Below are positions 12,473 to 30,618 of a DNA stretch of 64,000 nt, in pieces. The notes beneath the pieces are model-generated. The model was not told the origin of the DNA, ran no database searches, and saw only the letters and a list, made by a program, of their open reading frames with translations. Numbering within the stretch: the first letter of the stretch is position 1; every line of letters starts with the position of its first letter. This stretch comes from Macrostomum hystrix (taxonomy: Eukaryota; Animalia; Platyhelminthes), in contig CATNEN010000024.1 of NCBI GenBank assembly GCA_950097015.1, forward strand, positions 5,766,001 through 5,830,000, read 5' to 3'. Made by a program: the position numbers and the translations under genes.

Positions 12473-12707
12473 GTTATTATTATTTTTTTTTTCCACTTTT
12501 TTGCCAAACTAACGAGCAAGCACAACATGAGATAAACTGCTGCATATGTTGGGTGCTGTGTGGAGATTGTTTTTTGGTTGCTGTTGCAGCAACAGCTGCC
12601 TCTTTTAGTTTGTCCTGCCTGGACCCCTGGGCGCTGGTGTAGCAGCAGCTATTCTCCTCTCCAGGATTTCCCAGAGGTGATGTAGAACAGGCATTCTGGA
12701 CCCCGGT
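12473..12707 (-). mobile_element. 3' end of a non-LTR retrotransposon (ORF end, UTR, A/TAA tail), left of the Polinton
   Basis: Its frame (PGSRMPVLHHLWEILERR...GRTN, stop at 12605) continues the ORF at 30095-30618 once the Polinton is removed. An A/TAA tail lies at about 12473-12492. Confidence 0.7.
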
Positions 12708-13232
12708 AGTAGTATGAGTTTATGCAACTCTGCCGCACTTGCATTGCGGAGATAGGCGGCAATGCAAAAGGATAGGACGGCGTGGCGATGGCATGGGGTG
12801 GGTGTTAATTGGGTTGGGGTTAGGGCAGGCCGCGCGTGTATGATTAGGCAAGCCAGGCGCATTGTACATTGGTGGAGCGAGGGGTGAGGCGCTTAGAGGG
12901 GTCTGAGGGGAAGGAAGAGAGGAAGAGGGAGTCCTTCTGTGTGACCCAATGCCGATGCTCTAATGCTTATTCAACTCTGTCGCACTTGGACAGAGATTGG
13001 AGAAGGGGCGCTCCTATGCTTGTGCAACTCTGCCGCACATACAAGGCGGAAATGAAAAGGGATAGGATTGGCCTGGCCATTGGTTGGCAGTCTGGGGAGT
13101 TGGGGTGGGGGATAATCGGATTGGACAGGGGTCCTCGCGCGTGTTGTAGCCCGCCGCTCTGTACAGAGTTGGAAATGAAGAGAGCCCTTCTATGTTTATG
13201 CGACTCTGCCGCACTTGGATAGAGATTGGAGA
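12708..13232 (+). repeat. Polinton left TIR
   Basis: Reverse complement of 29571-30094, with about 5 substitutions and one indel seen by eye. Confidence 0.95.
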
Positions 13233-13515
13233 AGGGCGCCCCAAATGCTTATGCAACTCTGCTGCACTAACAGTTGGTGCAGGAGCATGATGCGATATAT
13301 ATAAGAGTAAAGCAGCCCAGCTTGCTGCCAGCAATGAGCTTTGTTATTGTGAAGTAGACGGCAATGCTCTGAATGGTACATATTAAAAATTAATATAAGA
13401 GTCAGGTTTTATGAGCTGAAGAGATCTTATGTGCCCAATATGATGATCTGCTGTACGGAAAATTATATAGCGGCTCGAGTGCCTGAATATAAGCCTGTAT
13501 GTTTACACACTACGG

Positions 13516-13560
13516 CACCCACCCCACTCCATGAACCCACCCCACTCCGAGGGTATATAA
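13516..13560 (+). promoter_or_regulatory. Candidate promoter of the plus-strand block: CACCC repeats and a TATA box
   Basis: CACCCACCCCACTCC and ACCCACCCCACTCC are followed by TATATAA at 13554-13560, about 85 nt before the ATG at 13644. Confidence 0.5.
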
Positions 13561-13643: not shown

Positions 13644-14396
13644 ATGGATCTCTGCGACGGCTTCAAGGTTCAAGTGCAAGAATACGAAGGTCATAGATTC
13701 ATTGCGATACGGTGCTTCTACACTGCCGAGGGCGAGCTGAAGCCGGGCATCCCGGGCTTCAATCTGAACCCACATCAGTGGGAAAAGCTGAAGCAACTGA
13801 GGCGTCAACTGGTGCACTCTGCAGTCAACCGGCACAATGTCACCGCCAAGCTGGGCTACGACAAACTCGTTGAAGTGAAGAGGGGAGTAATCTGGCTCAA
13901 GCGACTGCCTGAGGATTGCACGGAGGACTTCCTGAAGCGAAATTCAGTTGAACTGACGCCCCGTCTGTGGCGGGAACTGTGGAAAAAGGCCGAATGGCTC
14001 AGTGGCGAGCTGAGGGGAAAGTCGCCAGACAGCGAATACGAGCTGGACCCCAAGAACATTAAGATTGAAGCAGGCACTAGCATCGAGCATCAAGAAACGT
14101 GGCCTTCCGGTGAAGAGGCCGATGATGGGGAGAAGACTCTGCTCATCGCCCAGTCGGACAATGCAACTGCGGAGCTGCCTTTGCCGGTCGCATCATCCAC
14201 ACCACCGTCATTCGGTCGCATCCCGCAGCAGGATAGTAACTTGGCCCTGGATCCACTGTGGTACCAGACTCGTGCAGCTACAGGGCTGAGCGGCAGCAGC
14301 AGTCGCAAGCGCAAGCTGCCATGGCCCCTGCGCAGGATGGATCCGATAAAGTTTCCAAAGCTGACGGAAGATGATGACGAAAATGATATTGAGTGA
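13644..14396 (+). CDS. PC4/Sub1 (p15)-like ssDNA-binding or coactivator domain protein
   Basis: The N-terminus FKVQVQEYEGHRFIAIRCFYTAEGELKPGIPGFNLNPHQWEKLKQL parallels the PC4 core (V..F.G...IDIRE.....GE.KPG.KGISL..EQW..LK). A second, degenerate copy may follow (ELTPRLWREL). The tail is acidic and basic. Confidence 0.75.
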   Translation: MDLCDGFKVQVQEYEGHRFIAIRCFYTAEGELKPGIPGFNLNPHQWEKLKQLRRQLVHSAVNRHNVTAKLGYDKLVEVKRGVIWLKRLPEDCTEDFLKRNSVELTPRLWRELWKKAEWLSGELRGKSPDSEYELDPKNIKIEAGTSIEHQETWPSGEEADDGEKTLLIAQSDNATAELPLPVASSTPPSFGRIPQQDSNLALDPLWYQTRAATGLSGSSSRKRKLPWPLRRMDPIKFPKLTEDDDENDIE

Positions 14397-14791
14397 ACTG
14401 AACTGATTATTAATAATGTGACAATGAATTCTGCTTTGAGTTACGTTGAATTTTCTTAGTCGACGAAAATTTGTCATGCTACTGCTTGCAATTGCTTGAC
14501 TCTACAATTTCATTCACATTTATTCAGCTAATTTTTTATATATAACTCTATAGCTTAATACTCGTAATGTTTCTTAAAAAATCTCCCTGTTCAGTGAGCA
14601 GTGCGGCTGTATTGATTTGCTATTGTATCTCTTTAATCTGTGAGCCTTACATTTATGCAGTAAAACGTTTTGCCACTTATTCCGCAAAAAATAAAACAAG
14701 CATAACACTCTTGTGTGCTCTGTTAATAAAAAAGCCAGCAACTTAAGAAAAAAAATTGCGTATTTTTCTTATTAATTTCTAAACATTGACT

Positions 14792-15859
14792 ATGGAAACA
14801 AAATACTATAGTCCCGCTCAGCCGGCCAGTTTCTCGGGTGCATCAAAGCTACTGCATGAATTGAGGAAAACTGATCAACGCATATCTGAAAAGGGCATCA
14901 AACAGTGGCTGACAGAGCAGCCAGTGTACACACTGCACAGGCCTGCTAGAAGGCGCTATCCGAGAGCACCAATCGTCGTCAGAGCAATTGATGATCAATG
15001 GGAACTTGACCTGGTTGAAATGATACCATTTGCAAAGTACAATAATGGATACAAGTACATTCTTACATGCATTGATGTGCTGTCTAAGGCTGCATGGGCC
15101 ATGGCACTAAAGAGCAAGTCAGCTGCAGAAGTAAAGTCTGCTTTCGAGAGCATTCTGAGGTGCTCAAAGCGCCAGCCTCGCACAGTCCGCACAGATCAGG
15201 GCAAAGAGTTCATCAATACGAATTTTCGGGAATTCTGCATAAGCAAAGGGATTTTAGCATTTCAAACAAATAGTGAGCAGAAAGCAGCCATCATCGAGAG
15301 ATGGAACAGAACTCTGAAGAGCAAGATGTGGAAGTATTTCACACACAAGAGCACACTGCATTGGGTTGACGTGCTGCCTAAGCTGGTAAAGTCGTACAAC
15401 AATACTTACCACAGAAGCATAAAGATGGCACCGACAAGTGTCTGCAAAGAGAATGAGTCTGAGGTCTGGATGAAGCTGTACGATGGCAAGGCAATTGAGA
15501 CAGTGAAGAAGCTGAGGAAGCCAAAGTTCAGTGAAAACCAGGCTGTGAGAATTTCCAACGCGCCCAGGCTGTTCCACAAGGGCTACAAGGCCAACTGGAG
15601 TGAGGAAGTGTGCACTGTGGTGTCCAGGGCGCCAAAGCATTACCCGTACATGTACAAGATTAAAGACATGAAGGGAGAAGAGATTCGGGGACTCTTTCAC
15701 GAGCATGAGTTGCAGGCTGTTCCGGACTCACACCGGCTCTATGTGATTGAGAAGATTTTAAAAACTGAAAAGAGAAATGGGAGAATTCGCTATCTGGTCA
15801 AGTGGGCTGGCTACAACTCCACTGGGTGGGTGGAGGAGAAAGACTTAAGAAAAGTGTAG
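14792..15859 (+). CDS. Polinton retroviral-like (rve) integrase with C-terminal chromodomain
   Basis: DDE triad in WELDLVEM, VRTDQGKEF and IIERWNRTLK. C-terminal chromodomain YVIEKILK...YLVKWAGY...WVEE. Confidence 0.95.
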   Translation: METKYYSPAQPASFSGASKLLHELRKTDQRISEKGIKQWLTEQPVYTLHRPARRRYPRAPIVVRAIDDQWELDLVEMIPFAKYNNGYKYILTCIDVLSKAAWAMALKSKSAAEVKSAFESILRCSKRQPRTVRTDQGKEFINTNFREFCISKGILAFQTNSEQKAAIIERWNRTLKSKMWKYFTHKSTLHWVDVLPKLVKSYNNTYHRSIKMAPTSVCKENESEVWMKLYDGKAIETVKKLRKPKFSENQAVRISNAPRLFHKGYKANWSEEVCTVVSRAPKHYPYMYKIKDMKGEEIRGLFHEHELQAVPDSHRLYVIEKILKTEKRNGRIRYLVKWAGYNSTGWVEEKDLRKV

Positions 15860-15892
15860 ATAATCTATGAATATTATAATATTATAAACTCT

Positions 15893-16702
15893 ATGATGAG
15901 AAATATTGTCATCAGCAGCAGTCATGCCGAAGGTACTCCTACTGACTTTCATTTTTACCTTCCTTCACCTATTTATCTTGATCGAAATGTGGACTATGAG
16001 GTTGGTCTGGTGGAACTCCATCTGCCTGCTACATGGTTCAATGTTGACGAACCTTACTGCTTCACTCTCTCAGATGGAACAGAGCATGAAGCCCTGGTTC
16101 TTCAACCCGGACGCTTTGGCAGAGTGGAGGAGCTGGTTGAGTCTCTGAATGATCTACTAGCTAATTCCGAGTTCTATGATGCCAGAAGCGAGCGAGATGC
16201 TGAGATGGAGGCTGACGAATCAGGTCTTCTGGGGCGTCGAGGTGATGCTAAATACACTGGAATAAGATTTGACATTCATAACTCGAGAGCCGTAGTGCAG
16301 AACAACACAGTGCAAGCAGAGCTGCATCTTCCACCTAGCAAGATTCTGCAGTGGCTTGGATTCGGCAACCAGGGAGCAAAGATTCGACCCGGGCGGCTTG
16401 TCTCAGAGCACTGCATTGGCTGCCCGCGCACCAATTTAATTAATGTGCACTGCAGCATCGTTGAGTCAAGCAATTGCAACGGCAATTCACTGTTGAGAAC
16501 AGTTCGAATGAAACCTGATGCTGAATGGGGAAACTATGTGAGCAAAGTGTTTAAGAAGGCAATCTACTTTCCGATCCCGAGGATCCATTCTTTATACAGC
16601 CTTCGAGTTCAACTGCGAGACATTTTTGGCAGCCTTCTGATTGCCCATTCCTGCAGTCCCGTTCTGCTAACAGTTCAGATTCGGGAGAAAAGAATTCAAT
16701 GA
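15893..16702 (+). CDS. Polinton minor capsid (penton) protein
   Basis: FHFYLPSPIYLD..YEVGLVELHLPATWFNV and NLINVHCSIVE...LLRTV...YFPI...LRVQLRD..G match the Polinton PZ/penton pattern. It lies upstream of the MCP. Confidence 0.8.
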   Translation: MMRNIVISSSHAEGTPTDFHFYLPSPIYLDRNVDYEVGLVELHLPATWFNVDEPYCFTLSDGTEHEALVLQPGRFGRVEELVESLNDLLANSEFYDARSERDAEMEADESGLLGRRGDAKYTGIRFDIHNSRAVVQNNTVQAELHLPPSKILQWLGFGNQGAKIRPGRLVSEHCIGCPRTNLINVHCSIVESSNCNGNSLLRTVRMKPDAEWGNYVSKVFKKAIYFPIPRIHSLYSLRVQLRDIFGSLLIAHSCSPVLLTVQIREKRIQ

Positions 16703-17082
16703 ATTACCAGCAGCTCATTCGGCAGTATTCGGGTGCGCAAACTACCAAACAACCTGCACTGTACGGCTGCGGGAGCTCACCGGGACTCATGACGTTCCAG
16801 CCTCCACCGGCTGTTTCATCAACGTTAGCTGCTGCTGATCTCATGAATGGCAACCTTGCCAAGAAGTCTTCTGTGAAATCAAAGCGAAAGAGAAGAAAGT
16901 TGTCGAAAAGCACTAGTAATCATAGTAACGGCAGTAAGAAAAAGAAGAGAGCAAGAAGGAAGCAGGCAAGGTCAAGCAAGAAAGAGCTTAAGAAGAAGTC
17001 CGGGAAGACCAAGAAAGCAACCAAAAAGAAACGAAAAGTCAGCAGGAAAACTGTGAAGCGCGTACTGGACTCTCTGTCATAG
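16699..17082 (+). CDS. Small Lys/Arg-rich basic protein, candidate virion core protein
   Basis: The C-terminal half is almost entirely K/R/S. LYGCG at aa 21-25 fits the adenain (M/I/L)xGx-G consensus. It sits between penton and MCP with an ATGA start/stop overlap. Confidence 0.65.
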   Translation: MNYQQLIRQYSGAQTTKQPALYGCGSSPGLMTFQPPPAVSSTLAAADLMNGNLAKKSSVKSKRKRRKLSKSTSNHSNGSKKKKRARRKQARSSKKELKKKSGKTKKATKKKRKVSRKTVKRVLDSLS

Positions 17083-17085
17083 ACA

Positions 17086-18369
17086 ATGGCTTACGGATTC
17101 AACCCCAGGCTCGACTTGTTCAAGACACCCGTGCTGCAGACTTGCATTGAGAAATCCACCTATGTTGACATTCATCCCGTGAATTCCATTGTTGCAAACT
17201 CACCCATTGAATTTGACTGCCACCAATCAGCTGACGAGTACACTGATTTGGTGAACTCATTTCTCTACATTCGTTGCCGCATTGTGAGGCTGAATGGAGC
17301 ATTGATGAGGGAGGATGAGCTGGGTGAGGGTGGAGTTATCGCAGACAGCAGAGACAGCAACGTGCATCCGGAAAATTTTGTGTTGCCCACAGCCTTCTCA
17401 GATGTAATTGTTAGCATTAACCAGCGAATCGTCTCTGGGGGTGACCAGCTGTACCCGTACCATGCCTACTTCAAAGCACTGATGAGCTCATCCGATGCCC
17501 AGCAACTCAAATTTCACCCTGCCGGTTTCCTGGAACCCGACTCAGCTGATGAGGACCACACTGAGAACCACAGGACCTCCCAATGGAGGGAATATGCGGG
17601 ACCTCTCCTTAGCGACATTTTCCAGTGCCCTGTGTTTCTGCTGAACAATTTGCACCTGCACATCAAACTGGTGCCCAGTGATGGAGCATTTGGAATCAGA
17701 GCTCCAGCCGCCAACGACACCGCCTACAGGATGGAAATATCGCACTGCATCCTCTATCTTCGCCGAGTCAAAGTTCTGCCCCACATCAGCTTGGCTCACG
17801 AGCAGGGGCTGGCTAATCAGAATGCGCTCTACCCAATTGAGCGAACTGAAATGCAAAACTTCATCCTGCCCCAGGGAATTCAGTCAAAGAATATTGAAGG
17901 ATTCACACATGGAAAGCTCCCGAAATTCATCATGCTGGCCTTCGTCAACCACCGAGCCTTCAATGGGCACCATCATTCCAGCCCGTTCCAGTTCCAAAAC
18001 TTCAACCTGAGTCAGCTTGCTCTCAAGAAAGGGGGTGAATCCATGTGCCATGGGGCGTTTACACCTGAGAACAATTCGTTTGTGAGAGAATATTTGCACT
18101 ACCTGAAAAGCTGTCAATCTGCGAGCCACACCAACTCGGTTCCATCGATTCCCTACCAGCTCTTCTCAAACGAGAACACAGTGTTCGCATTCGATCTGAC
18201 ACCCGAGGGAGCGGCTCTGTGGTACGGGCAGAAGGAGGGAAACCTGCGGCTGGAGATTCGGTTCCGACAGGCCTTGGGTGAAGCCGTGTCCCTGATTGTC
18301 ATGTGTGTGTATGACTCACTGATTGAGGTCACCAAGCACAGGGAGCTATTGCTGGACTATTCGTCTTGA
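17086..18369 (+). CDS. Polinton major capsid protein (double jelly-roll)
   Basis: 427 aa. LDLFKTPVLQTCIEKSTYVDIHPV...PIEF...YTDL..SFLYIRCRI, and FAFDLTP...GNLRLEIRF..AL...V.LIV...YD..IE, match Polinton PY/MCP. Confidence 0.9.
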   Translation: MAYGFNPRLDLFKTPVLQTCIEKSTYVDIHPVNSIVANSPIEFDCHQSADEYTDLVNSFLYIRCRIVRLNGALMREDELGEGGVIADSRDSNVHPENFVLPTAFSDVIVSINQRIVSGGDQLYPYHAYFKALMSSSDAQQLKFHPAGFLEPDSADEDHTENHRTSQWREYAGPLLSDIFQCPVFLLNNLHLHIKLVPSDGAFGIRAPAANDTAYRMEISHCILYLRRVKVLPHISLAHEQGLANQNALYPIERTEMQNFILPQGIQSKNIEGFTHGKLPKFIMLAFVNHRAFNGHHHSSPFQFQNFNLSQLALKKGGESMCHGAFTPENNSFVREYLHYLKSCQSASHTNSVPSIPYQLFSNENTVFAFDLTPEGAALWYGQKEGNLRLEIRFRQALGEAVSLIVMCVYDSLIEVTKHRELLLDYSS

Positions 18370-18913: not shown

Positions 18914-18928
18914 TAAAGCCTGAAAGAC

Positions 18929-19576
18929 ATGGAAGCAGAAAAAGTGTACTATGATGTGCGCCTGCGGCAGGGCAGCTGCATGATTGTCTGCGGACCCACA
19001 AATGCTGGAAAGACAACCTTCGTGAAGCATCTAATCCAGTACAGGGATGTATTATTCGACGTCCAGCCTGGGAGAGTGCTCTGGTACTATGGGATCCCAC
19101 AGCCAGCGCATGCTGAGTTGAGCAGTCGTGGTGTGCAATTGCATCAGGGATTCCCAACCAACTTTGAGAGCTCATTGATGAGCAATGATTTGGTTATTTT
19201 TGATGATATGATTGATGAAACTTCTAATTCTGCTTCAATGCGAAATACTTTCACTGGACTCGCCCATCATCTGCCATGCTTTCTTGTAATTCTCACTCAG
19301 AATATGTTTTTCAAGGGCAAAGAGTCGCGGACCATGAGCTTGAACGCGATGTACTTTGTGATCCTAAAAAACCCCAGAGACCAGCTGCAGATCGCTGCAT
19401 TGGGCAGGCAGTGTTTTCCAGAGAAGCCTGGCTTCCTGCTTGCTGTGTTTAAGCATGTCACAGCGCAGGGCAGGGGGACCTACCTATTTCTGGATTTTCA
19501 CCCTTGCACTCCTGATGAGTTGCGAGTGCGAGCCAGAATTCTGCCCAATCAGAGGCCACATCTGGTTTATGCTTAA
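18929..19576 (+). CDS. FtsK/HerA-family (A32-like) packaging ATPase
   Basis: Walker A GPTNAGKT, Walker B LVIFDD, plus ILTQNMF, RTMSLNAMYFVILKNPRD and YLFLDFHP. Confidence 0.93.
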   Translation: MEAEKVYYDVRLRQGSCMIVCGPTNAGKTTFVKHLIQYRDVLFDVQPGRVLWYYGIPQPAHAELSSRGVQLHQGFPTNFESSLMSNDLVIFDDMIDETSNSASMRNTFTGLAHHLPCFLVILTQNMFFKGKESRTMSLNAMYFVILKNPRDQLQIAALGRQCFPEKPGFLLAVFKHVTAQGRGTYLFLDFHPCTPDELRVRARILPNQRPHLVYA

Positions 19577-19589
19577 GAATAGGTTGAAA

Positions 19590-19931
19590 ATGTATCTTGC
19601 CCGAATTATTGCAACAATGGAAGTGTTCGAAACTCATCAAAGCTTATTTGAAGTCCTTGCCTCACCCAAATATACAATTAGCCTCAAGCGCGCAATAATA
19701 AAGCTGGGTCCGACTGGAGTTTGCACTTTTCTTGTCGAGGCCTGTTACAACCTATTGAAAGACAATTTGCCATTTTCTCTTGTTGAAAAGACAGCGCTAT
19801 TGAAATCTAAAAAGATAATCCGCGAAATTCCCCGGCAAAGAAAAAAGAGTGACTTACTTAAATATTATTTTATCAAAATCCTTCCAATTCTGCTGAAGCT
19901 GGTCAAAAGGAAGAGAAGAGGAGATGCATAA
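19590..19931 (+). CDS. Small basic conserved Polinton protein, function unknown
   Basis: KRAIIK...FLVEACYNLLKDNLPFS..EK..L...K..IR resembles the small conserved protein found downstream of the ATPase in Polintons. Confidence 0.55.
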   Translation: MYLARIIATMEVFETHQSLFEVLASPKYTISLKRAIIKLGPTGVCTFLVEACYNLLKDNLPFSLVEKTALLKSKKIIREIPRQRKKSDLLKYYFIKILPILLKLVKRKRRGDA

Positions 19932-20613
19932 ATTCACTGAGATGGTTCTCATTTCAAGGTCCGAATATGAAATGCTAAAGAGGAGTGTCAAACCCATGGA
20001 GTCTGTGAGTGACACGGCCACAAAGCAAGCACAATTGAAATGCGATGATATCTTGTTGACCGAAGACTATCCAGATGATATGAAGGCAGCACTGTACCAG
20101 AGTGCCATGAAGAACTTGCTGGCGAAGCGAAAGCAGGCAGGAAAGGAAACAGCATCAGAAGAGAAAAAAGCAAAGATTGTGAAACCCGAGATGCCTCTAA
20201 GAAGCTGGGAAGAAAAAATCTGCCAGTCAGTGCCACAGAAGTTCAAACCCAGGGCTCGCAGTCTATGGGCCACCCTATCTGGCAGCCAGTCTGCTATCCG
20301 GGTGTCCGATAATGGGGAGGTGAATATTTCTGGGAACTCGATCCCTGCCTCAAACATAGTGGATTTAATTCTGCACACAGTGAAGGACTCAAAAAGTTCC
20401 AGTGAGCCTGTGGGATGGGCCGCTTTCAGTGAGTTGCTGCGCCAAAAGAATCTCAATGTGCCAATGTCAGCCGTAGGAAAATCTGTACAGAAAGAAATTT
20501 TGGACCCAATTTTGAGTGAAGAGGCACAGCCCTCACTCAAGGGACTGGGCAGCAAGTCTGCTTGGCTGAGGTTAAACAGGGAGAGAAAAAAGTATTTAAG
20601 AAAGGGAGGATAA
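19924..20613 (+). CDS. Conserved Polinton hypothetical protein
   Basis: VPQKFKPRARSL...NGEVNISGNSIPASNIVDLI......P.GW..F is a motif typical of Polinton hypotheticals. The ORF is intact. Confidence 0.65.
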   Translation: MHKFTEMVLISRSEYEMLKRSVKPMESVSDTATKQAQLKCDDILLTEDYPDDMKAALYQSAMKNLLAKRKQAGKETASEEKKAKIVKPEMPLRSWEEKICQSVPQKFKPRARSLWATLSGSQSAIRVSDNGEVNISGNSIPASNIVDLILHTVKDSKSSSEPVGWAAFSELLRQKNLNVPMSAVGKSVQKEILDPILSEEAQPSLKGLGSKSAWLRLNRERKKYLRKGG

Positions 20614-20650
20614 TCGAATTCTGCTGGTTTCAAGGCACGGTCGCTTGAGC

Positions 20651-21499
20651 ATGAACTACATAGACATTCAGGGCTTCCCGTGCGACGGAGAGAATGATGA
20701 CTTCATCGTGAAGGAGTTGGCGATCCTTGAAGTCAGGAAAGGAAGCTATCACATTTCCCACCATGTGTACGCACCGCCATATGATTGGCAGAGAGTTTCA
20801 CCTGACATACGAACGTATTACAATCAGCTTTCCAAAAATCTACATAAGCTCAAGTGGACCGATGGAACTCGACCATATTTTCAATTAGCTGATGACATTG
20901 TGAGCATTGGTAGCGGCGTCAACTGGACAAGCGGAGAGAAGAAAACTATTTTTCTAACTGAGTTACTTGGCAGACTGGTCTACAATCTAGACGATTTGGG
21001 CCCGCCTTTGAGCGATGAGTCAGACACTGGCTGTGCAATGAAAAATGTTCTACTGTACTACAGCTGGCTGAAGCCAACATTTTGTGTCAACTTAAGAAGC
21101 GACAAGTGCTTGTGGCATAAGAGCTCAAGAGACTGTAGCAGCAGCAACAGCCATATCAACACTCAAAATGAGCAGAGGAGCTGCAACCCTGAGTGTCACC
21201 AACCTTGTTGGTGGAGTGGATCTGAGACTGAATGGAGGCAGGGGCGCCCAGCTTCCTCTAAGGGAGCTGGCTCTGAGCATGGCTCATGTGATTTATCGCC
21301 CCGTGTGGCCCAGAGTGCTCATCAAGCGGATGCGGAATCCCAGAGTCACCCTACTGCTCTATCCCACCGGCCAGCTCAGCATCTGTGGAGCAAAGAGCTA
21401 CGCCGACTCGGTCAGGGCTGCCCGGCGCTTCATCGCTATGCTGCATCGCCGAGTGCCGGCTCAACTGCTGCCTCGTCAAGCTTTCTGTGTGAGAATTAA
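20651..21499 (+). CDS. Polinton protein with an N-terminal DEDD/DnaQ-like exonuclease-fold motif
   Basis: IDIQGF...FIVKELAIL, HKLKWTDG, VYNLDDLG and CAMKNV..Y.W. The C-terminal ~110 codons overlap the TBP-like ORF. Confidence 0.5.
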   Translation: MNYIDIQGFPCDGENDDFIVKELAILEVRKGSYHISHHVYAPPYDWQRVSPDIRTYYNQLSKNLHKLKWTDGTRPYFQLADDIVSIGSGVNWTSGEKKTIFLTELLGRLVYNLDDLGPPLSDESDTGCAMKNVLLYYSWLKPTFCVNLRSDKCLWHKSSRDCSSSNSHINTQNEQRSCNPECHQPCWWSGSETEWRQGRPASSKGAGSEHGSCDLSPRVAQSAHQADAESQSHPTALSHRPAQHLWSKELRRLGQGCPALHRYAASPSAGSTAASSSFLCEN

Positions 21500-21734
21500 G
21501 ACTATTACTGCTAGGGGAAACCTTGAATTATGCGGTGCTTTATCCCTGTCTACTTTAAACAGTATTCTACCCGCTGCGAACTATGAACCTGAATCCTTTT
21601 CTGCTTTGATTTGTAAACTCCGTTTTTGTAAGTGTTTGCTTTTCCATAACGGCTCGTTTGTTCTCAGTGGAGCTCGCTCTCTGAGTCAATTGCGCTCCGA
21701 TGCTGAGTACCTTGCAACACTCATCCCTTCTTGA
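21168..21734 (+). CDS. TATA-binding protein (TBP)-like protein encoded by the Polinton
   Basis: Two TBP repeats. Repeat 1: TNLV..V...LPLRELAL....IYRP...LIKRMRNPRVTLLLYPTGQLSICGAKS.ADSVRAARRF. Repeat 2: NYEPESFSALICKL....CLLFHNGSFVLSGARS. 188 aa, intronless, with no N-terminal extension. Confidence 0.88.
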   Translation: MSRGAATLSVTNLVGGVDLRLNGGRGAQLPLRELALSMAHVIYRPVWPRVLIKRMRNPRVTLLLYPTGQLSICGAKSYADSVRAARRFIAMLHRRVPAQLLPRQAFCVRIKTITARGNLELCGALSLSTLNSILPAANYEPESFSALICKLRFCKCLLFHNGSFVLSGARSLSQLRSDAEYLATLIPS

Positions 21735-22939: not shown

Positions 22940-25900
22940 TCAATCTTCTTGCAACCGTATTTGCTTGGGGGCATGATCACCGACAAGTTGAGGAGCCTCA
23001 CGACGGTGGCGGCGGCGGCGGTCGTTCAGGTAGTTCTCTCTTAGTGCAAAGTGTCCGTATGGAAGACTTTGATTCGGTGCAACCCATGCGCGCTTGTCCT
23101 CCCATACTGTCAAGGCACGTTTCTTTTGCTCCAGAGTGAAGAGACGGTGTCTCCGGCTAGCAATCCTACGCACAGAGATGCTCAACTCCTTGAGATTAGC
23201 AAAGGCCTGCCTGTAGTCTTCGTGTGAAATTTCAGTCCGCATCACACTCTTCTGAACTCCCTTTGCTGCCTTCTTGCCTCCAATGGCAGCCTTCATCGAG
23301 TACAGCTTCGGTCTCAACAGGATTCCACTCATTGTGGGGATTTCCAGCCTGACTCATCCTTTATGCAGCCCAACTTTGCCTTAAGCTCATCCGATCGCAG
23401 TTCATGATCAACCGGGAAGTTCGATGTGTCCAGCAGCCTCTGGCGAATCAGTTCAGGAATCACGCTGGTTTGAACGTCAGTTTTTTTGAAACAGGAAAAA
23501 CGAATCCGTTTCTCCACCGCAGAGAGAAACTTCTTGCCGGAGAACAGGATTATCGAATGTCGGCTTTAATCTGTCGTAAAATAACTTGTACATTGCAAGC
23601 TTCAAATCGTCGAGGACGCACTGTCCGATGAAGATTTGGCGGTCAAGAGTGACAGAAGGCTTAAAAAGTGAAAAAACAACCAAGTCCTTTGTCACAATAG
23701 TGAAATCCTTCAGGCTCTGTCGGGATGCATAAATTTCTGACTGCTCCGGAGTGTTCGAGATTCTAACACTGAGTCCTCTTGCGCACGTTCTCCATTGTTT
23801 TCCCGAAGAGGGAGTTATTCTTCAGTTTGTAATAAGTCCTTCTCGAACTCATTGGCAGCTGCTGCCTGCTTCTCACTGTTCTTGGCGATGTAGCCTTGAA
23901 AAATTGCTGCCTGCTGAAAGCGAAAGCACATCGAATCTTTTTTAATCGCATGCCATGGCGCAAGTAAAACTTCAGCACTCTGAAATGCACGATGTAAGCC
24001 TCCTTGTCATGACACGTCAGGAGAAGCTTCGAATAGCCCTTATAGGGCTTATCGCGTGAATTAAGTTCACTCCAAAGACTTTTCATAAATGGTGGAAATT
24101 CCTCGAACTGGGGTGTGGCTCTCTCCGGTGCAAACGGCAGGTCCTGAGTCTTCTGATGAATCACATCAGGATACTCCAAATCCACTTCAAATAGGTAGCC
24201 AACAGGTCCATTGTCTTCCAACTCAAGCAGTCGCTTCTCGTTCCAATCTTGCAGATCATCATCACCAATCCAGACAAAATCACTGACCGGAAGTTTTTCA
24301 GAAAGCGCTTGTCCATAGAGGTTATTCATATCTACTGGAAGCAATGCATTAGTCGACAAGGCAGCATCATCGTTTGTGCCAACAATTCCAGCTGCGACAT
24401 GATGAATGTTCGTGAAGGTCATACCTCCACGAATTCCAAGCTCAAAAAGACGATATTGCTCAGCATCACTGAGCAATTGAAGCTGAGTTGTAGCTGACTT
24501 CAAAGCCGAATCAAATGAAAGACCTGGCGTCGTAAAATAGTGCACCGGATCAAGTCCGTCATCGCGGAGACTCAAGCGGCGAAAGTTTTGGAAGACGTCC
24601 GCGAGTTGACGAATGTCGAGCTGCAAATAGGCATGTATGTAGTCATGCAAATTTTTTGCCTCAAGCTGGCCCCAGGCTTTGAGAGCATGACCATAGTTCT
24701 CCTCGCTGCAAGGTGTCTTGGTCAGTGAATTGAAAAATTCTTCTCTGCTCGGCAATTTTGTCACCGCTAAACTTGCAGGACACTTAACAAAATCATACGG
24801 AAAGACTCCCTTGACAGACAGTGTCTCATCGGTCAAATTCGGAAAGCAGCTTTTCATTAGCTGAGTGAATTTTCGGTCTTGGACTGACAAGTTGCGAATC
24901 AGTCTGTCCAGACCAGCGTTCAAAAATTGGAACGAATCGAGGAACTGCAGCGTGAAGAAAATGGTCTTCTTTTTTCCTTGTGGCAAGTTGACTTCTGCAA
25001 CTGGAAAGTCTGCTCGGAGAGACATGTAGCGCTCAGACGTTTGAGGAATGACGCTCAGCTTCCAATTCTTCATGGTTCCCAAAGCTGTTGAAAACAAGAG
25101 GTGCATGTCATAGTTCTTAAGATTATGAAAGAAAATCGGCAAAAATCTTCGGCGAAGCTGTGCAGACTTGTTGCAACGCGAGCAGGCAGCACCTTTGAAC
25201 TTCCCAGTGAGGTGATCGTGGTCATAGTGCTTGTCACTTGAGTTTACAAACTGCTGAGCACAGTAGTGACAACGGGTAGACTCACAGAAAATCTGCCTAG
25301 ACACTGGATCTGCTTCTGGCTTCTGGTAGCTGTGGACTCGGTTCCATTCGTGAACTTCTCGAGCAACGATTTCCAGTTCGTGAAGAAATTTTTCCATGCA
25401 CTCAAATGAACTAGAGCTAGAAAACAGCTTCACGTGACCTTCGTCTTTGAGCGGTGGTCCCTTAATACCATCTCGAGAGACTACTAAAAACCCGGCTGCC
25501 GCAGGCAGATGCTCGGTAAGGAACATAGTAGTGCCTGTTCCACTGCTTCGAGCTGGTCTTTCGTCACAGTCTTTTGCTTCTGCTCGATCTCTGCTGCCTT
25601 CCAATTGGTCGCCATCACTGAATTCGATCCTATCGACTTTCTCATTCACACCTTCTCGACCCGGAAAGTTAGAATTGAGCGGCGAATTGAATGCCTCGAT
25701 ATCGGCGTAGATAACGAAAGGAGCTTCAATGGTCTTGCAATAATTCTGAAAAGCCAGAGTGCAACGATTCTGAGATGGAATCTTTTCCTTCAGCTGCAAA
25801 ATCGTTAGATCGATAGCACTGCTCTCTGTGCTCTGCAAGCTTCTGAGCACTGACGAATGCAGTCAAGCAGCGCTCACACCACTTCCTGTGACACAAGCCA

Positions 25901-26875
25901 ACCTTGCTGTTCAGCAGCCTGTCGAGGTTCACGATTCCGCACCAGTGAGTCTTATTTTCATCTTCTGATTCGTTCAGCAGGAGAAGAAGGATAACTTTGC
26001 GATTGCACGCCACTTCGACACGCGGTTGTCTGAGCACACTAACTTCATCACTAGACCACGTAAGAACAACAAAGCACAAAGTTGGGTTTAATGACTCAAT
26101 TCGGTTGAGCTGACTTAGTCCTACTGGCAATGAAACTCCATTTAGATTCACTTCAGACAGCCAGTCTTTGTACGTCGTAAAGTCTATGGGGATTCTTTCT
26201 CAAATTTCCGTCTCCGTGATGCAGCACTGCAAGACAATCATACAGGAAACAATCTGAACCTGTGCTGAGAGGATTGATGATGGCTTTCTTCGCCTTCAAC
26301 ACTGGAGGAAGCTCGAATTTGTCGGCGTGGCCAGTGTAGAATCGCAGTCTCTGTCCAACCGCAATGCTTCAAGTCGATACAATTCACACGCACAATCACC
26401 CAGCCACTTCCATTCGTGTTCATCTTATCAATGGTACCTTCACAGCCAGCAATTTGCCGAGTCCACCAATCCTCAAAGCAACAGGCATCATTGACGATTT
26501 GCAAACTGGTACTAACCCATCTTTCCTCTTCATTGACAACTTGCCCAGCTTGAAGTCTCTGCATCTGAATGCTCATCTTGCTCATCTGAATGCTCACCTA
26601 GATTAGGCGGGGGGACGCCGTCGAACTGTGCTCTCATCGCACGATTCGGATTCGCCATCTTCTCATCTAGGATTCGCTGCACTGCATCCTTACTTCTACG
26701 TGTGAGTTCGAATGGGTCACTAGCTGCATCGTTTTGTACAGTGATTCGGTACACCTCCAAAGTTCCTTTGTGCACACTTGCTACTTGTTGAACGTCAAAA
26801 TTTTCAAAATGATAATTTTCTCTTATTTTTAGGACTTCGATATTTCCCGATTATTCCCCGTCTTATATCTCCCAT
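22940..26875 (-). pseudogene. Protein-primed family B DNA polymerase with endonuclease VII insert, multiply frameshifted
   Basis: Pieces at 26875/26775-26530, 26597-26238, 26151-25726, 25850-23763, 23695-23477, 23517-23329 and 23332-22940. Motifs: C2H2 finger CERC..H...C, ExoI YADIEA, EndoVII CHYC...DHDHLTGKFKGAACSRCN, ExoII FFHNLKNYD, ExoIII Y..LD, PolA DMNNLYG, PolB KLKNNSLFGK, PolC GETDS. Confidence 0.93.
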
Positions 26876-26917
26876 ATCCCCCCTAACTTCTTGGAAGCAC
26901 AGCTGCACACTAAAAGC

Positions 26918-26929
26918 TTTTATATAAAA
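26918..26929 (-). promoter_or_regulatory. Candidate TATA box for pPolB
   Basis: Palindromic TTTTATATAAAA about 45 nt upstream of the candidate PolB ATG at 26875. Confidence 0.35.
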
Positions 26930-28043: not shown

Positions 28044-29105
28044 TTACAGTGGAGTGAAAAAAATTGCGTTGCTATCAAGTCTTATCAAATAACCTGCGCC
28101 AATAATTGGTGGCAGGACGAGTTGAATATGGCTTCTGGGCGCAACCATTTCGACTGGCATGTCATTCCTTGCCAAGGGACCTTCAGCAGGCCCAGCAGTG
28201 ACGAGCGCATTCAGCAACGAGTCGAAGTCACCAGCCGACTCCATGAAAACTTGTTGAATTGGCTGAGCATTGTCGACGGTGGCAGGGTTGCAAGCCTGCT
28301 GGGCATTGCTGACCGTGGCAGCGATGTCAGCCAGCTGAGCATTGCCGACGGTAGCAGCGATGTCAGCCAGCTGAGCATTCTCAACGGTGGCAGCGATGTC
28401 AGCCAGCTGGTCATTGTCGACGGTGGCAGCGATGTCAGCCAGCTGAGCATTGTCGACGGTGGCAGCGATGTCAGCCAGCTGACCGTTGTCGACGGTGGCA
28501 GCGATTTCAGCCAGCTGGTCATTGTCGACGGTGGCATCGATGTCGACGAGCTGGCCATTGTCGATTGAGGCGAAGAGCTGACTTTCCTCTGCATCGGTCG
28601 GCTCCTCATTCCGCTCCTCCATGCTAATATTCGGGGAGCTCATTAGGAGCTGCTTTCCACGAACTTCTGGTGGGGGTCGTCGAGCATTCGGCTGCCGCAG
28701 ATGCTGCTGCTGTTTCTGCGATTCCGACTTCTGACTCGTCGGAAAATTTACAAAATCGTCGTCGCTGTTTGCTTCTGCAACAACTTTTTTGATGACTTGG
28801 CTGAGGACCTGCTTTCTTGCTGCCTCTTCGTCAGGGAGCTGCCGTGCTTTTTGCAGTACAATTCTCTTAATGTTTTTCAGGCCATTATCTCCGCTTGGGA
28901 GTTGCTGGTGTCCACTGTGTCGCATGGCCGACAAATTTTTGTCGCTATGCTTAAAAATGTTGCACTGCCAACAAACACTAAACTTGCTAGTCTTGCATGT
29001 TACATGGCGATCTGCCTTCAGGCCTCCTAGGACGCACTTGCTGCATGTAATGCATGCTTCGAAGAAAGGCAGACTACATGAAACGGAAGTCTTCTTGGCT
29101 TTCAT
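28044..29105 (-). CDS. Polinton ORF with Cys/His-rich N-terminus and 12-aa repeats
   Basis: ATG at 29105. CITCSKC...CWQC..H...H is followed by about 8 copies of AATVDNAQLADI. The frame is uninterrupted. Confidence 0.6.
   Translation of the reverse strand: MKAKKTSVSCSLPFFEACITCSKCVLGGLKADRHVTCKTSKFSVCWQCNIFKHSDKNLSAMRHSGHQQLPSGDNGLKNIKRIVLQKARQLPDEEAARKQVLSQVIKKVVAEANSDDDFVNFPTSQKSESQKQQQHLRQPNARRPPPEVRGKQLLMSSPNISMEERNEEPTDAEESQLFASIDNGQLVDIDATVDNDQLAEIAATVDNGQLADIAATVDNAQLADIAATVDNDQLADIAATVENAQLADIAATVGNAQLADIAATVSNAQQACNPATVDNAQPIQQVFMESAGDFDSLLNALVTAGPAEGPLARNDMPVEMVAPRSHIQLVLPPIIGAGYLIRLDSNAIFFTPL
28265..28565. repeat. 36-bp coding tandem repeat
   Basis: About 8 copies of CATTGTCGACGGTGGCAGCGATGTCAGCCAGCTGAG-like units. 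Confidence 0.9.
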
Positions 29106-29191
29106 TTCATTCACTTCAAATTTAATTCTCTTGTAGCTTGTATTTATTGCGCCGAAAAACAATTTAATATTTTGCAAAGAAAAATTCACCG

Positions 29192-29280
29192 TTATATAAA
29201 GACCCTTTCATCCTCTTACACCCACCCCCTCCACACCCACCCCACTACACCCACCCCTCCACAACCACCCCTCCACACCC
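29192..29280 (-). promoter_or_regulatory. Candidate promoter of the minus-strand block: GGGTG/CACCC repeats and a TATA box
   Basis: TATATAA on the minus strand at 29192-29198, about 90 nt upstream of ATG 29105, preceded by a CACCC-repeat tract at 29221-29280. Confidence 0.45.
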
Positions 29281-29570
29281 AGGGGAGGTGCAATCATCGC
29301 ACAGGCCGCCTCTCCTCTCCCCAACTGCCCCGCGATCTCTGCCCCTGTACGCACCGGAATGACTAGGCTTGGGCTATCAGTGCACAAGCCCTCAAATTGA
29401 ACTATTCTCCCAGGCTAGGACCAGCCCAGGATTTGCTTAACAAATCCCAACAATCTCTATGCAAACTTCAAGTCCATTCTTTTCACTATCATCACAATTC
29501 AGTGCTGGAGCGCCTGACTCTCGCCTCCACGCTAGTCTTCGGAACACCTAGCAGCTAAGTCTAAGAGCCG

Positions 29571-30094
29571 TCTCCAATCTCTGTCCAAGTGCGGCAGAGT
29601 CACATAAACATAGAAGGGCTCTCATCATTTCCAACTCTGTACAGAGCGGCGGGCTACAACACGCGCGAGGACCCCTGTCCAATCCGATTATCCCCACCCC
29701 AACTCCCCAGACTGCCAACCAATGGCCAGGCCAATCCTATCCCTTTTCATTTCCGCCTTGTATGTGCGGCAGAGTTGCACAAGCATAGGAGCGCCCCTTC
29801 TCCAATCTCTGTCCAAGTGCGACAGAGTTGAATAAGCATTAGAGCATCGGCATTGGGTCACACAGAAGGACTCCCTCTTCCTCTCTTCCTTCCCCTCGGA
29901 CCCCTCTAAGCGCCTCACCCATCGCTCCACCAATGTACAATGCGCCTGGCTTGCCTAATCATACACGCGCGGCCTGCCCTAACCCCAACCCAATTAACAC
30001 CCACCCCATGCCATCGCCACGCCGTCCTATCCTTTTGCATTGCCGCCTATCTCCGCAATGCAAGTGCGGCAGAGTTGCATAAACTCATACTACT
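29571..30094 (-). repeat. Polinton right TIR
   Basis: Reverse complement of 12708-13232. Ends ...CTCATACTACT and is followed by the TSD CCCGGT. Confidence 0.95.
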
Positions 30095-30618
30095 CCCGGT
30101 TTTATCCTAATCGGATCAGGGCGCCTGTCTAGGGTGTGGATTTTAGCCTTGCAGGCTTTAAGGAGCCAGCGGGTCCCCATATCATCAATCCTGTTCGCTA
30201 CCAGGGGCATCTGGGCATGCTCATGCAAGTAGCTGGTGGAGATGTAGGATGGGATCCCATAGAAGATTCTGAGGGCAATGTTTTGAATTTTCTGAAGGTC
30301 ACTCTTGTTTCCCGGGCTTAGGATTGTTAGAATGGGTGCTCCATATGTCATGGTGCTCTCCACGTAAGCCCGGTATAGCATTTTCAGAGTGTCGCTCTTC
30401 AGATTGGTCTTTTTTGCAATCTTGCTAAGGCACATCACCTGCGCTCTGCAAGTGTTGATTTGTGATTTCACGTGTTCATTGAGTCTCAGGTTAGTGTCCA
30501 GCTTTATGCCGAGGAACTTAACTACATCGCAGTTTTGAATTTGCACAGTTCCCAGGTGGAGTTGGGGCCGTTTGTCCTGGCACCCTTGCCAGGTGTTATG
30601 GCACATACAATTAGCCAT
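30095..30618 (-). pseudogene. 5'-truncated non-LTR retrotransposon, RT thumb and C-terminal region
   Basis: VKFLGIKLDTNLRLNEHV...LYRAYVESTMTYGAP...LQKIQNIALR...G.P.Y.S...LH is a typical post-RT LINE region. Confidence 0.85.

What the first reader, a model, noticed from the sequence alone, without database searches (positions are those of the whole stretch)
21168..21734. A Polinton/Maverick virus that encodes its own TATA-binding-protein homolog
Seen: an intact, intronless 188-aa ORF inside the TIRs, the last gene of the plus-strand block. It aligns by eye with both TBP core repeats, including the GAKS and GARS signatures, RxRxPRxT and AARRF. Known: in yeast TBP, F99/F116/F190/F207 intercalate into the TATA box and E186/E188 (YEPE stirrup) contact TFIIB. 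Here the repeat-2 Phe pair (ESF, LLF) and the YEPE stirrup are kept. The repeat-1 pair appears replaced by W and Y, and the repeat-2 Asn by Thr. TBP homologs are established in giant Nucleocytoviricota, but are not among the standard Polinton genes I know. Inference: a captured, diverged TBP that could redirect host Pol II/TFIIB to viral promoters with altered specificity, or act as a TFIIB decoy. I cannot confirm novelty without a literature and database search.
Basis: partly seen in the sequence, partly recalled or inferred. Interest (0 to 1): 0.92.

Follow-up and report, generated by a model that had tools for sequence, protein, structure and literature searches.

The report
Polinton-encoded TATA-binding protein homolog
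A virus-like Polinton/Maverick element, most likely in a Macrostomum flatworm genome, carries its own conserved and selectively maintained copy of the TATA-binding protein, and the same gene (often with a PC4/Sub1-like cofactor gene) recurs across a broad, barely described lineage of such elements that have no RNA polymerase of their own.

Summary
Window 21168-21734 (+) is an intact 188-aa ORF. It matches Pfam TBP (E 3e-23, both repeats) and folds as a TBP saddle (pLDDT 96; TM 0.8-0.86 to solved TBPs). It is the last gene of the plus-strand block of a 17,387-bp Polinton (12708-30094). That element has a 6-bp TSD, AG...CT termini, ~530-nt TIRs, an rve integrase, a double-jelly-roll capsid protein, an adenain-like protease, a packaging ATPase and a pPolB.

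The gene is not a one-off capture. Syntenic intact copies occur in Macrostomum lignano and Logan contigs (pN/pS 0.26-0.39). More distant TBPs sit in related Polintons from metagenomes, often beside a PC4/Sub1-like gene.

All Polinton-borne TBPs share T-x-T/S in place of the repeat-2 Asn-x-Val. The Macrostomum clade has also lost the repeat-1 Phe pair (Pro and Tyr; the Trp is adjacent). The TFIIB-contact glutamates and the repeat-2 Phe pair are kept.

Three corrections apply. This copy's PolB is heavily broken. TBP in Polinton-like viruses was already labelled in one 2021 figure legend. The function is inferred, not shown. The likeliest role is a virus-specific promoter-recognition factor that recruits host polymerase.

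Also found: the upstream ORF overlaps the first ~330 nt of the TBP gene in 7/7 copies.

The parts
12702..12707 (.). Left target-site duplication, CCCGGT
   Evidence: The same 6 bases flank both ends of the element
12708..13235 (.). Left terminal inverted repeat; the element starts 5'-AG
   Evidence: the repeat finder I1 (408 nt, 99%) plus I2 (133 nt, 95%); termini read
13554..13560 (+). TATATAA box about 90 nt before the PC4-like gene, preceded by CACCC-type repeats
13644..14396 (+). PC4/Sub1-like gene (250 aa), first gene of the plus block
   Evidence: Pfam PC4 E 2.2e-10; PDB human PC4 E 6.6e-7; single frame against L012
14539..14545 (+). TATATAA box between the PC4-like gene and the integrase
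14786..15859 (+). rve integrase with a weak C-terminal chromodomain match
   Evidence: Pfam rve E 1.1e-14, Chromo E 1e-4; 80% identical to L012 and intact
15893..16702 (+). 269-aa ORF of unknown function, conserved (269 aa also in L012 and L019); minor capsid candidate, untested
16699..17082 (+). 127-aa ORF, not characterised
17086..18369 (+). Major capsid protein, double jelly-roll (427 aa), intact
   Evidence: AF2 pLDDT 82.9; Foldseek to PBCV-1 Vp54, SGIV, mavirus and Sputnik MCPs, E 6e-16 to 1e-13; homologs of 413-439 aa
18366..18880 (+). Adenain-like cysteine protease, broken in this copy (one frame change)
   Evidence: Pfam Peptidase_C5 23.3 bits against cutoff 21.3; 2 HSPs in 2 frames against the 183-aa L012 protein
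18929..19576 (+). Packaging ATPase (A32/FtsK-like P-loop), intact
   Evidence: Weak Pox_A32/FtsK hits; 34% identical to the L025 ATPase, which hits Pox_A32 at 1.2e-6
19440..19931 (+). ORF homologous to the L012 138-aa gene, function unknown
19924..20613 (+). 229-aa ORF, conserved, function unknown
20651..21499 (+). ORF-U, a conserved gene of unknown function; its last ~110 codons overlap the TBP gene in the +2 frame
21168..21734 (+). TBP homolog (188 aa), the finding itself
23039..26787 (-). [quoted passage not shown] Broken in this copy: against the intact L012 protein, 7 HSPs in 3 frames, 6 frame changes and 8 in-frame stops.
   Evidence: Pfam DNA_pol_B_2 and Endonuclease_7
26920..26926 (-). 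TATATAA box upstream of PolB
28044..29189 (-). 381-aa ORF holding a 36-nt tandem repeat (8.4 copies); function unknown; first gene of the minus block
29192..29198 (-). TATATAA box before the 381-aa ORF, next to a 14-nt CACCC-type repeat (29218-29281)
29568..30094 (.). Right terminal inverted repeat; the element ends CT-3'
30095..30100 (.). Right target-site duplication, CCCGGT

Best explanation
The ORF is a genuine, selectively maintained TBP-family gene that belongs to the Polinton, not to the host. Shown: it has the two-repeat saddle fold. It occupies a conserved slot (ATPase, two small ORFs, ORF-U, TBP, convergent with PolB) in sister elements. Related TBPs occur in distantly related Polintons. 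These TBPs share a derived signature on the DNA-reading face, T-x-T/S instead of the repeat-2 Asn-x-Val. They keep the repeat-2 intercalating Phe pair and the two stirrup glutamates, which in cellular TBPs contact TFIIB/TFB. Inferred: the element has no RNA polymerase, so its TBP works with the host machinery. It most likely binds a TATA-like site in the element's promoters with altered half-site preference, and nucleates a host pre-initiation complex there through TFIIB (Pol II most likely; a TFIIB-like Pol III factor is not excluded). The element's PC4/Sub1-like protein may act as cofactor. This would give the virus promoter recognition that is partly independent of, or competitive with, host TBP/TFIID. 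In the Macrostomum clade the repeat-1 side has changed further (Pro and Tyr where the Phe pair sits), which predicts asymmetric bending or a different 3' half-site. The confidence given is for the functional reading; that the ORF is a real, conserved Polinton TBP gene is close to certain.
For: - Identity and fold: Pfam TBP E 3.3e-23. PDB TBPs score down to 8.9e-21. AF2 gives pLDDT 96.4 and pTM 0.88. Foldseek matches 44 TBP chains with TM 0.79-0.86.
- Belongs to the element: it lies inside a Polinton with TSD, TIRs, integrase, MCP, protease, ATPase and PolB.
- Conserved slot: L001, L011, L012, L002 and L005 are collinear with the window. L019 has the same gene order with an MCP only 36% identical.
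- Selection: NG86 dN/dS is 0.13-0.25. Uncorrected pN/pS is 0.26-0.39, with 95% upper bounds of at most 0.51 for the whole gene and at most 0.69 in the half that is not dual-coding.
- Breadth: TBP genes sit in Polinton contigs L015, L020-22, L024-27.
- Signature: T-x-T/S is in every Polinton-borne TBP, in none of the 65 canonical N-x-V TBPs aligned, and in 43-44 of 48 further family members.
- Retained partner and DNA residues: E140, P141, E142, F144 and F159 are 6/6 in the clade and 81-96% in other TBPs.
- No RNA polymerase domain was found in any element ORF scanned.
- TATATAA occurs in the element only at intergenic sites in the right orientation before PC4, INT, PolB and the 381-aa ORF. Comparable boxes head the blocks in L001 and L012.
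- PC4 and TBP co-occur in three divergent groups: the window/L012 family, L020, and L025/L027.
Against: - There is no expression, binding or interaction evidence of any kind.
- The library type of the Logan contigs is unknown, so they do not show transcription.
- Several canonical DNA-contact residues are replaced: F to P, F to Y, N to T, V to S/T and T to C/S. Sequence-specific TATA binding could therefore be weakened rather than retargeted.
- One residue next to the TFIIB-contact glutamates, Leu in many TBPs, is Ser in 4 of 6 clade members.
- The TATATAA boxes are ordinary host-type boxes that host TBP could serve.
- This particular copy has a broken PolB and protease, so it may be silent.
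- Monophyly of all Polinton TBPs has no bootstrap support.
Confidence: 0.5

Rival explanations
1. Decoy or dominant-negative TBP. The protein keeps the partner-binding surfaces (TFIIB stirrup, perhaps the TFIIA, NC2, Mot1 or TAF1 surfaces) but has a crippled TATA-reading face. It would titrate host factors or block host promoters, shifting transcription toward the element or dampening host responses.
For: The repeat-1 Phe pair is lost and central minor-groove residues are replaced in the Macrostomum clade. The stirrup residues E140/E142 are strictly kept.
Against: The replaced residues are themselves invariant within the clade (6/6) and the gene is under purifying selection across its whole length, including the DNA face. 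That pattern fits a retuned surface better than a dead one. Most members of the wider Polinton TBP family keep all four Phe. The repeat-2 DNA-kinking pair is intact.
Confidence: 0.2
2. Architectural DNA-bending protein for genome replication, integration or packaging rather than transcription. The saddle would bend DNA at the TIRs or origin for protein-primed replication, with the PC4-like protein serving as the single-strand-binding protein of strand-displacement synthesis.
For: The PC4 fold is a single-stranded-DNA binder (established knowledge), and no other SSB was recognised in the element. In the window family and L015 the TBP gene is adjacent to and convergent with PolB. In L020/L025 it sits next to the integrase.
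Against: The glutamates that serve TFIIB/TFB contact in cellular TBPs are conserved in all Polinton TBPs, which is unexplained by a pure architectural role. The PC4-like domain is closest to eukaryotic PC4/Sub1 transcription cofactors. No TATATAA box lies in the outer TIR; the first is at 13298, inside the element.
Confidence: 0.12
3. Passenger or relic: a captured host-derived ORF with no present function, intact here by chance in a decaying copy.
For: This copy has a heavily broken PolB and a broken protease. One M. lignano copy (L011) has a frameshifted TBP.
Against: Intact orthologs exist in at least five diverged lineages with saturated synonymous divergence and pN/pS of 0.26-0.39. The gene holds the same position in elements whose MCPs are 36-79% identical. 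Only about 30% identity to any cellular TBP rules out a recent capture.
Confidence: 0.03

Closest known systems
Cellular TATA-binding protein (eukaryotic TBP, archaeal TBP; e.g. PDB 1cdw, 1ytb, 1qn3, 1ais, 1mp9)
   Same: Two-repeat saddle fold of about 180 aa (TM 0.79-0.86). Also shared: the GAKS/GARS strands, N12/V14 of repeat 1, the repeat-2 Phe pair and the E-P-E stirrup.
   Different: Only 21-27% identity in the structural alignments and about 30% by sequence, equally far from archaeal and eukaryotic TBPs. P48/Y65 replace the repeat-1 Phe pair. T112/T114 replace Asn/Val, and S71/C73 replace Val/Thr. There is a 5-6 residue insertion after strand 1. There is no N-terminal tail. The gene is carried by a mobile virus-like element and half of it is dual-coding.
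TBP homologs of giant viruses (Nucleocytoviricota) and mirusviruses
   Same: Virus-encoded members of the TBP fold (BFVD hits). Mirusviruses carry TBP in 59% of genomes (PMC10132985).
   Different: Those viruses encode their own multisubunit RNA polymerase; no RNA polymerase was found in this element. The structural match is poorer (TM at most 0.78, 9-19% identity) than to cellular TBPs. No relative was found in IMG/VR.
'TBP' gene labelled in MELD viruses with adintovirus-like PolB (Starrett et al. 2021, Virus Evol, Fig. 5 legend)
   Same: A TBP-like gene in a Polinton-like, PolB-plus-integrase virus genome. This is the only prior mention found.
   Different: It is only a figure label in a section on non-animal datasets, with no analysis of residues, conservation, selection or distribution. 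I could not see the figure, so I cannot tell whether it is the same TBP family as here.
TBP-related factors (TRF2/TBPL1, TBPL2) of animals (from memory, not tested)
   Same: Diverged TBP paralogs in which TATA-contact phenylalanines are partly replaced and promoter choice is altered, while TFIIB/TFIIA binding is kept (established knowledge, recalled).
   Different: No named TBPL1/TBPL2 protein came back from any search, so no comparison was made. The nearest non-Polinton hits are generic TBPs at about 30% identity.

Membership tests
TBP family (Pfam PF00352) | Profile match above the curated threshold, covering both repeats | tested here: met
   81.8 bits against a cutoff of 22.9, E 3.3e-23, 2 stretches
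TBP family (Pfam PF00352) | Pseudo-symmetric two-repeat saddle fold | tested here: met
   AF2 pLDDT 96.4 and pTM 0.88. Foldseek to 44 TBP chains, TM 0.79-0.86, E down to 7e-15. The model's alignment is dominated by canonical TBPs, so high confidence is expected.
TBP family (Pfam PF00352) | Four DNA-intercalating phenylalanines, two per repeat | tested here: not met
   The repeat-2 pair is present (F144, F159). The repeat-1 columns hold P48 and Y65, where 91% of 90 other TBPs have Phe. Positions were mapped through the Arabidopsis chain 1qn3_A; yeast numbering is from memory.
TBP family (Pfam PF00352) | Central minor-groove Asn in each repeat | tested here: not met
   N12 is kept. The repeat-2 column is T112, against Asn in 88% of other TBPs. 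Thr or Ser is found in all Polinton-borne TBPs.
TBP family (Pfam PF00352) | Acidic C-terminal stirrup that contacts TFIIB/TFB | tested here: met
   E140, P141 and E142 are invariant in the clade and 81-93% in other TBPs. Contact itself was not tested.
TBP family (Pfam PF00352) | Sequence-specific TATA-box binding and DNA bending | not testable with these tools
Polinton/Maverick | [quoted passage not shown] | tested here: met
   Pfam DNA_pol_B_2 E 9.6e-8. It is broken in this copy (6 frame changes, 8 stops against L012) and intact in L001 (1152 aa) and L012 (1281 aa).
Polinton/Maverick | Retrovirus-like rve integrase | tested here: met
   Pfam rve E 1.1e-14; intact
Polinton/Maverick | Long terminal inverted repeats, 5'-AG...CT-3' termini and a 6-bp target-site duplication | tested here: met
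   TIRs of about 530 nt at 95-99%. AG/CT termini and CCCGGT on both sides.
Polinton/Maverick | Virion module: double jelly-roll MCP, adenain-like protease, A32/FtsK-like ATPase | tested here: met
   MCP by Foldseek. Peptidase_C5 above threshold. The ATPase match is weak in the window but homologous to the L025 ATPase, which hits Pox_A32 at 1.2e-6. The minor capsid protein was not identified.
Nucleocytoviricota/mirusvirus TBP-like proteins | Closer to viral than to cellular TBPs; resident in a genome with its own RNA polymerase | tested here: not met
   Best BFVD hits are at 9-19% identity and TM at most 0.78, poorer than cellular TBPs. No RNA polymerase domain was found in the element.
Animal TBP-related factors (TBPL1/TRF2, TBPL2) | Groups with named TBPL1/TBPL2 in a phylogeny | not tested
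   No named TBPL protein was returned by any search; the representative library has no names.

The most novel reading that the evidence does not exclude
A broad lineage of Polinton viruses of animals and other eukaryotes, which have no RNA polymerase, carries a private basal-transcription module. The module is a TBP whose DNA-reading face is systematically re-tuned (T-x-T/S signature, and in flatworm elements loss of the repeat-1 Phe pair), usually together with a PC4/Sub1-like cofactor. With it, the virus would assemble host Pol II on its own promoters independently of host TFIID. In the flatworm clade the TBP gene is in addition overprinted by the tail of the upstream gene.
Probability: 0.4. 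Interest if true: 0.8.

Novelty: new variant of a known kind. Interest (0 to 1): 0.66.

Why it matters
Virus-encoded TBPs were known from giant viruses and mirusviruses, which bring their own RNA polymerase. A conserved TBP, often paired with a PC4/Sub1-like gene, in small nuclear Polinton viruses that depend wholly on host polymerases is a different situation. It implies virus control at the level of the general promoter-recognition factor. The naturally re-tuned DNA-contact residues offer a series of TBP variants for studying how the saddle reads DNA. For Polinton biology, the work adds a recurrent accessory module, a sequence signature for finding it, and a clear example of a dual-coding region. 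It also shows that gene predictions in Macrostomum annotate these genes as host proteins or fuse them with neighbours.

Tried and rejected
- Exact look-up of the window's TBP found nothing on record.
- P0009 (54% identical, JGI metagenome) has no retrievable DNA.
- Scans for the Macrostomum-type TBP found nothing in JGI metagenome contigs or IMG/VR. The L020-type profile also found nothing in IMG/VR.
- The second metagenome scan mostly returned ordinary cellular TBPs at 39-41% identity with no Polinton genes nearby. Only L023-L027 were of the Polinton type.
- The GTDB genome scan with P0232 returned only archaeal TBPs.
- Phylogeny: the first script timed out. NJ with bootstrap supports the Macrostomum clade (93%) and its union with L019/P0016 (95%). 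It does not resolve whether all Polinton TBPs are one clade, or whether they derive from eukaryotic, archaeal or viral TBPs. I therefore make no claim on origin.
- PDB and Pfam searches for ORF-U, the 229-aa ORF and the 269-aa ORF gave nothing.
- There are no tRNA or Rfam RNA genes in the element, so there is no hint of a Pol III unit.
- The ends of the Logan contigs show no poly(A), so they cannot be used as evidence of expression.
- The idea of a second Polinton copy in the window (a 427-aa ORF at 45094-46377) was rejected, since it has no similarity to the element.
- At first I read the ends as lacking a TSD. Re-reading showed that the outer CCGG of the apparent TIR belongs to a 6-bp TSD.
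Full report
**1. The observation**

Window 21168-21734 (+) is an uninterrupted ATG-to-TGA ORF of 188 codons. It is the only TBP-like sequence in the 64 kb window.
- It matches Pfam TBP (PF00352) at E 3.3e-23, 81.8 bits against a curated cutoff of 22.9, over both repeats.
- It matches 35 distinct PDB TBP sequences, archaeal, plant, yeast and human alike. The best is 8.9e-21 and the rest fall between 1e-10 and 1e-14.
- An AlphaFold2 model built on a 96-sequence alignment has mean pLDDT 96.4 and pTM 0.88, with the expected beta-alpha-beta pattern twice.
- Foldseek returns 44 TBP chains at TM 0.79-0.86 and 21-27% identity, and then nothing relevant.

**2. The DNA-contact residues**

I mapped positions through the HMMER alignment to the full-length Arabidopsis chain 1qn3_A and a 96-sequence MAFFT alignment. 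The yeast numbers are from memory.
- The repeat-2 intercalating pair is kept: F144 and F159, which are Phe in 96% and 91% of 90 other TBPs.
- The stirrup E140-P141-E142 is kept.
- The column of the first repeat-1 Phe holds P48 (Phe in 91% of others). W47 is the residue before it, not at it.
- The second repeat-1 Phe is Y65.
- The repeat-2 Asn is T112 (Asn in 88% of others). Its neighbouring Val is T114.
- The repeat-1 Val/Thr are S71/C73.

All of these replacements are 6/6 within the close clade. They are fixed features and not decay.

**3. The element**

The ORF lies in a textbook Polinton/Maverick spanning 12708-30094 (17,387 bp).
- Ends: 5'-AG...CT-3' termini, a perfect 6-bp target-site duplication CCCGGT, and TIRs of about 530 nt at 95-99% identity.
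- Plus block:
  - a PC4/Sub1-like gene (Pfam E 2e-10; human PC4 in PDB E 7e-7);
  - an rve integrase with a weak chromodomain match;
  - a conserved 269-aa ORF;
  - a 427-aa major capsid protein (double jelly-roll by AF2 plus Foldseek: PBCV-1, SGIV, mavirus and Sputnik MCPs at E 6e-16 to 1e-13);
  - an adenain-like protease;
  - an A32/FtsK-like ATPase;
  - two small conserved ORFs, then ORF-U, then TBP.
- Minus block: a repeat-containing 381-aa ORF, and a protein-primed PolB with an N-terminal Endonuclease VII domain.
- No RNA polymerase domain, tRNA or Rfam RNA was found.

I compared this copy with the near-complete sister element L012. Nine plus-strand genes, TBP included, are single-frame and stop-free. 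The protease has one frame change. PolB is badly broken, with 7 HSPs in 3 frames, 6 frame changes and 8 in-frame stops. So this copy is not an autonomous virus, even though its TIRs and TSD look young.

**4. Sister copies**

Close homologs (68-77% identical) come only from three sources:
- Macrostomum lignano (assembly GCA_002269645.1);
- a series of Logan runs (SRR316283xx-4xx);
- one JGI metagenome protein at 54%.

Among 1.84 billion representative proteins, 894 match at E below 1e-3 but only five below 1e-30. The next best are about 30% identical.

L001, L011, L012, L002 and L005 are collinear with the window around the TBP gene. L001 and L012 have intact PolB genes of 1152 and 1281 aa. One M. 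lignano copy (L011) has a frameshifted TBP, which the genome annotation reads as a fusion with ORF-U. Other UniRef models fuse TBP pieces with unrelated neighbours.

Across five distinct intact copies:
- NG86 dN/dS is 0.13-0.25, with dS of 1.0-1.65.
- Uncorrected pN/pS is 0.26-0.39 with bootstrap upper bounds of at most 0.51. In the half of the gene that is not dual-coding the upper bounds are at most 0.69.

**5. Beyond the flatworm clade**

Homologs of the capsid protein led to metagenomic Polinton contigs that also carry TBP genes.
- L019 (JGI 3300040777) has the same gene order as the window. Its MCP is 36% identical, and it has a full two-repeat TBP ORF of 225 aa.
- L015 (beach-sand metagenome) has a 169-aa TBP convergent with PolB.
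- L020-L022 (ENA) have PC4, a BIR-domain gene, TBP and integrase in a row.
- L024, L025 and L027 have PC4, TBP and an integrase, which carries a chromodomain match in L025.
- L026 has TBP between the MCP and the ATPase.

All of these share homologous MCP (21-36% identical), integrase and ATPase. Their TBPs differ from one another about as much as the core genes do, at 25-35%. That fits long residence in the lineage and not repeated recent capture.

Every Polinton-borne TBP has Thr (Ser in L015) at the repeat-2 Asn column and Thr/Ser at the following Val column.
- None of the 65 canonical N-x-V TBPs in the alignment has this signature.
- A profile search found 64 proteins at E of 1e-10 or below. 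Of the 48 new full-length ones among them, 43 have Thr and 44 have Ser/Thr at these two columns. Most keep all four Phe.

Loss of the repeat-1 Phe pair is thus special to the Macrostomum clade and L019/P0016.

NJ bootstrap supports the Macrostomum clade (93%) and its union with L019/P0016 (95%). It does not support a single clade of all Polinton TBPs, and it does not place them relative to archaeal, eukaryotic or giant-virus TBPs.

**6. Promoters**

Within the element, TATATAA occurs only at intergenic sites and in the right orientation: before the PC4-like gene (13298, 13554), before the integrase (14539), before PolB (26920, minus) and before the 381-aa ORF (29192, minus). The two outer boxes sit next to CACCC-type repeats. 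L001 and L012 have comparable boxes at the heads of their blocks. From the integrase to TBP there is no such box and the ORFs abut or overlap. This suggests one long transcription unit, but that is inference.

**7. Mechanism**

Shown: identity, fold, conservation, selection, context and the pattern of kept and changed residues.

Inferred: the protein binds a TATA-like site with altered preference and recruits host TFIIB and polymerase to element promoters, possibly with the PC4-like protein.

Rivals are a decoy that titrates host factors, an architectural role in replication or packaging (with PC4 as a single-strand binder), and a functionless passenger. The first two are not excluded. The last is contradicted by the selection and synteny data.

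**8. Literature**

Full-text searches found no paper that discusses a Polinton or Maverick TBP. [quoted passage not shown] 2021 (PMC8502044). Viral TBPs are documented for mirusviruses (PMC10132985) and appear among giant-virus proteins in BFVD. No paper linking PC4 to Polintons was found.

**9. A dual-coding region**

The gene upstream of TBP, ORF-U (ATG at 20651), stays open in the +2 frame for 281-365 nt into the TBP gene in all seven copies examined.
- Given each TBP protein sequence, the chance of such an open frame is 0.002-0.05 per copy by codon resampling.
- Synonymous divergence is lower in the overlapped part (mean pS 0.48 against 0.71).
- GC3 is 0.62 in the overlapped part against 0.37 in the rest.

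This looks like true overprinting of TBP repeat 1 by the tail of ORF-U.

The script printed tblastn segment bounds for the frameshifted L011 copy. Those bounds show roughly where its frame changes. While reading P0006, my own reasoning also located that change approximately. I did not use this further, and I do not repeat it in the notes or here. The mechanical ORF listing also shows the fragments of the broken PolB. Consensus lines printed by the alignment tools were not used.

Noticed in passing
window 20651-21499 over 21168-21499; also L001, L002, L005, L007, L012, L019: The ORF upstream of TBP (ORF-U, no known domain) runs on in the +2 frame for about 330 nt into the TBP gene in 7/7 copies. 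The chance per copy is 0.002-0.05. Synonymous divergence is lower and GC3 higher in the overlapped part. This is probably a true dual-coding region.
   Followed up: yes
window 13644-14396; L012 218-1066; L020 169-714; L025 1302-1793; L027 303-890: A PC4/Sub1-like gene is the first gene of the element. It co-occurs with TBP in three divergent Polinton groups and is directly upstream of TBP in L025. No paper linking PC4 to Polintons was found.
   Followed up: partly
window 23039-26787 (minus strand): PolB is broken many times (6 frame changes, 8 stops against L012), while nine other genes are intact and the TIRs are 99% identical with a perfect TSD. Damage this uneven does not look like uniform neutral decay. 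The copy may be a non-autonomous derivative.
   Followed up: partly
window 13298, 13554, 14539 (+); 26920, 29192 (-); repeats at 13515-13548 and 29218-29281: TATATAA occurs in the element only at intergenic sites facing the PC4-like gene, the integrase, PolB and the 381-aa ORF. The two outer boxes sit beside CACCC-type repeats. There are no boxes between the integrase and TBP, where the ORFs abut.
   Followed up: partly
window 23763-25850; L001 2401-5859; L012 9698-13543; L015 1-2607: The PolB of this Polinton lineage carries an N-terminal Endonuclease VII (Pfam PF02945) domain.
   Followed up: no
window 28044-29189 (minus strand), repeat at 28262-28564: The 381-aa first gene of the minus block contains a 36-nt tandem repeat (8.4 copies, 86% matches). 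It has no domain match. The L001 counterpart is 472 aa with weak repeat-protein hits.
   Followed up: no
L020 1368-1826; L021 1073-1531: A BIR (inhibitor-of-apoptosis repeat) domain gene lies just upstream of TBP in one metagenomic Polinton group.
   Followed up: no
L011 3032-4111; proteins P0006, P0007, P0008: Macrostomum lignano gene models fuse Polinton TBP pieces with ORF-U, with an Ig-like protein and with a Parvo_NS1-domain protein. These look like annotation artefacts of integrated elements, and one rests on a frameshifted copy.
   Followed up: partly
window 47787-51879 (+): Neighbouring GC-rich (about 62%) LTR-retrotransposon pol gene (RVT_1, RNase H, integrase). It is unrelated to the Polinton.
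   Followed up: no
window 34757-46377 (minus strand): Four long ORFs (574, 637, 626 and 427 aa) have no Pfam match and no similarity to the Polinton. Their nature is unknown.
   Followed up: no
window 21735-23038: An AT-rich spacer of about 1.3 kb lies between the convergent TBP and PolB genes, against about 0.6 kb in L001. No RNA gene was detected in it.
   Followed up: no
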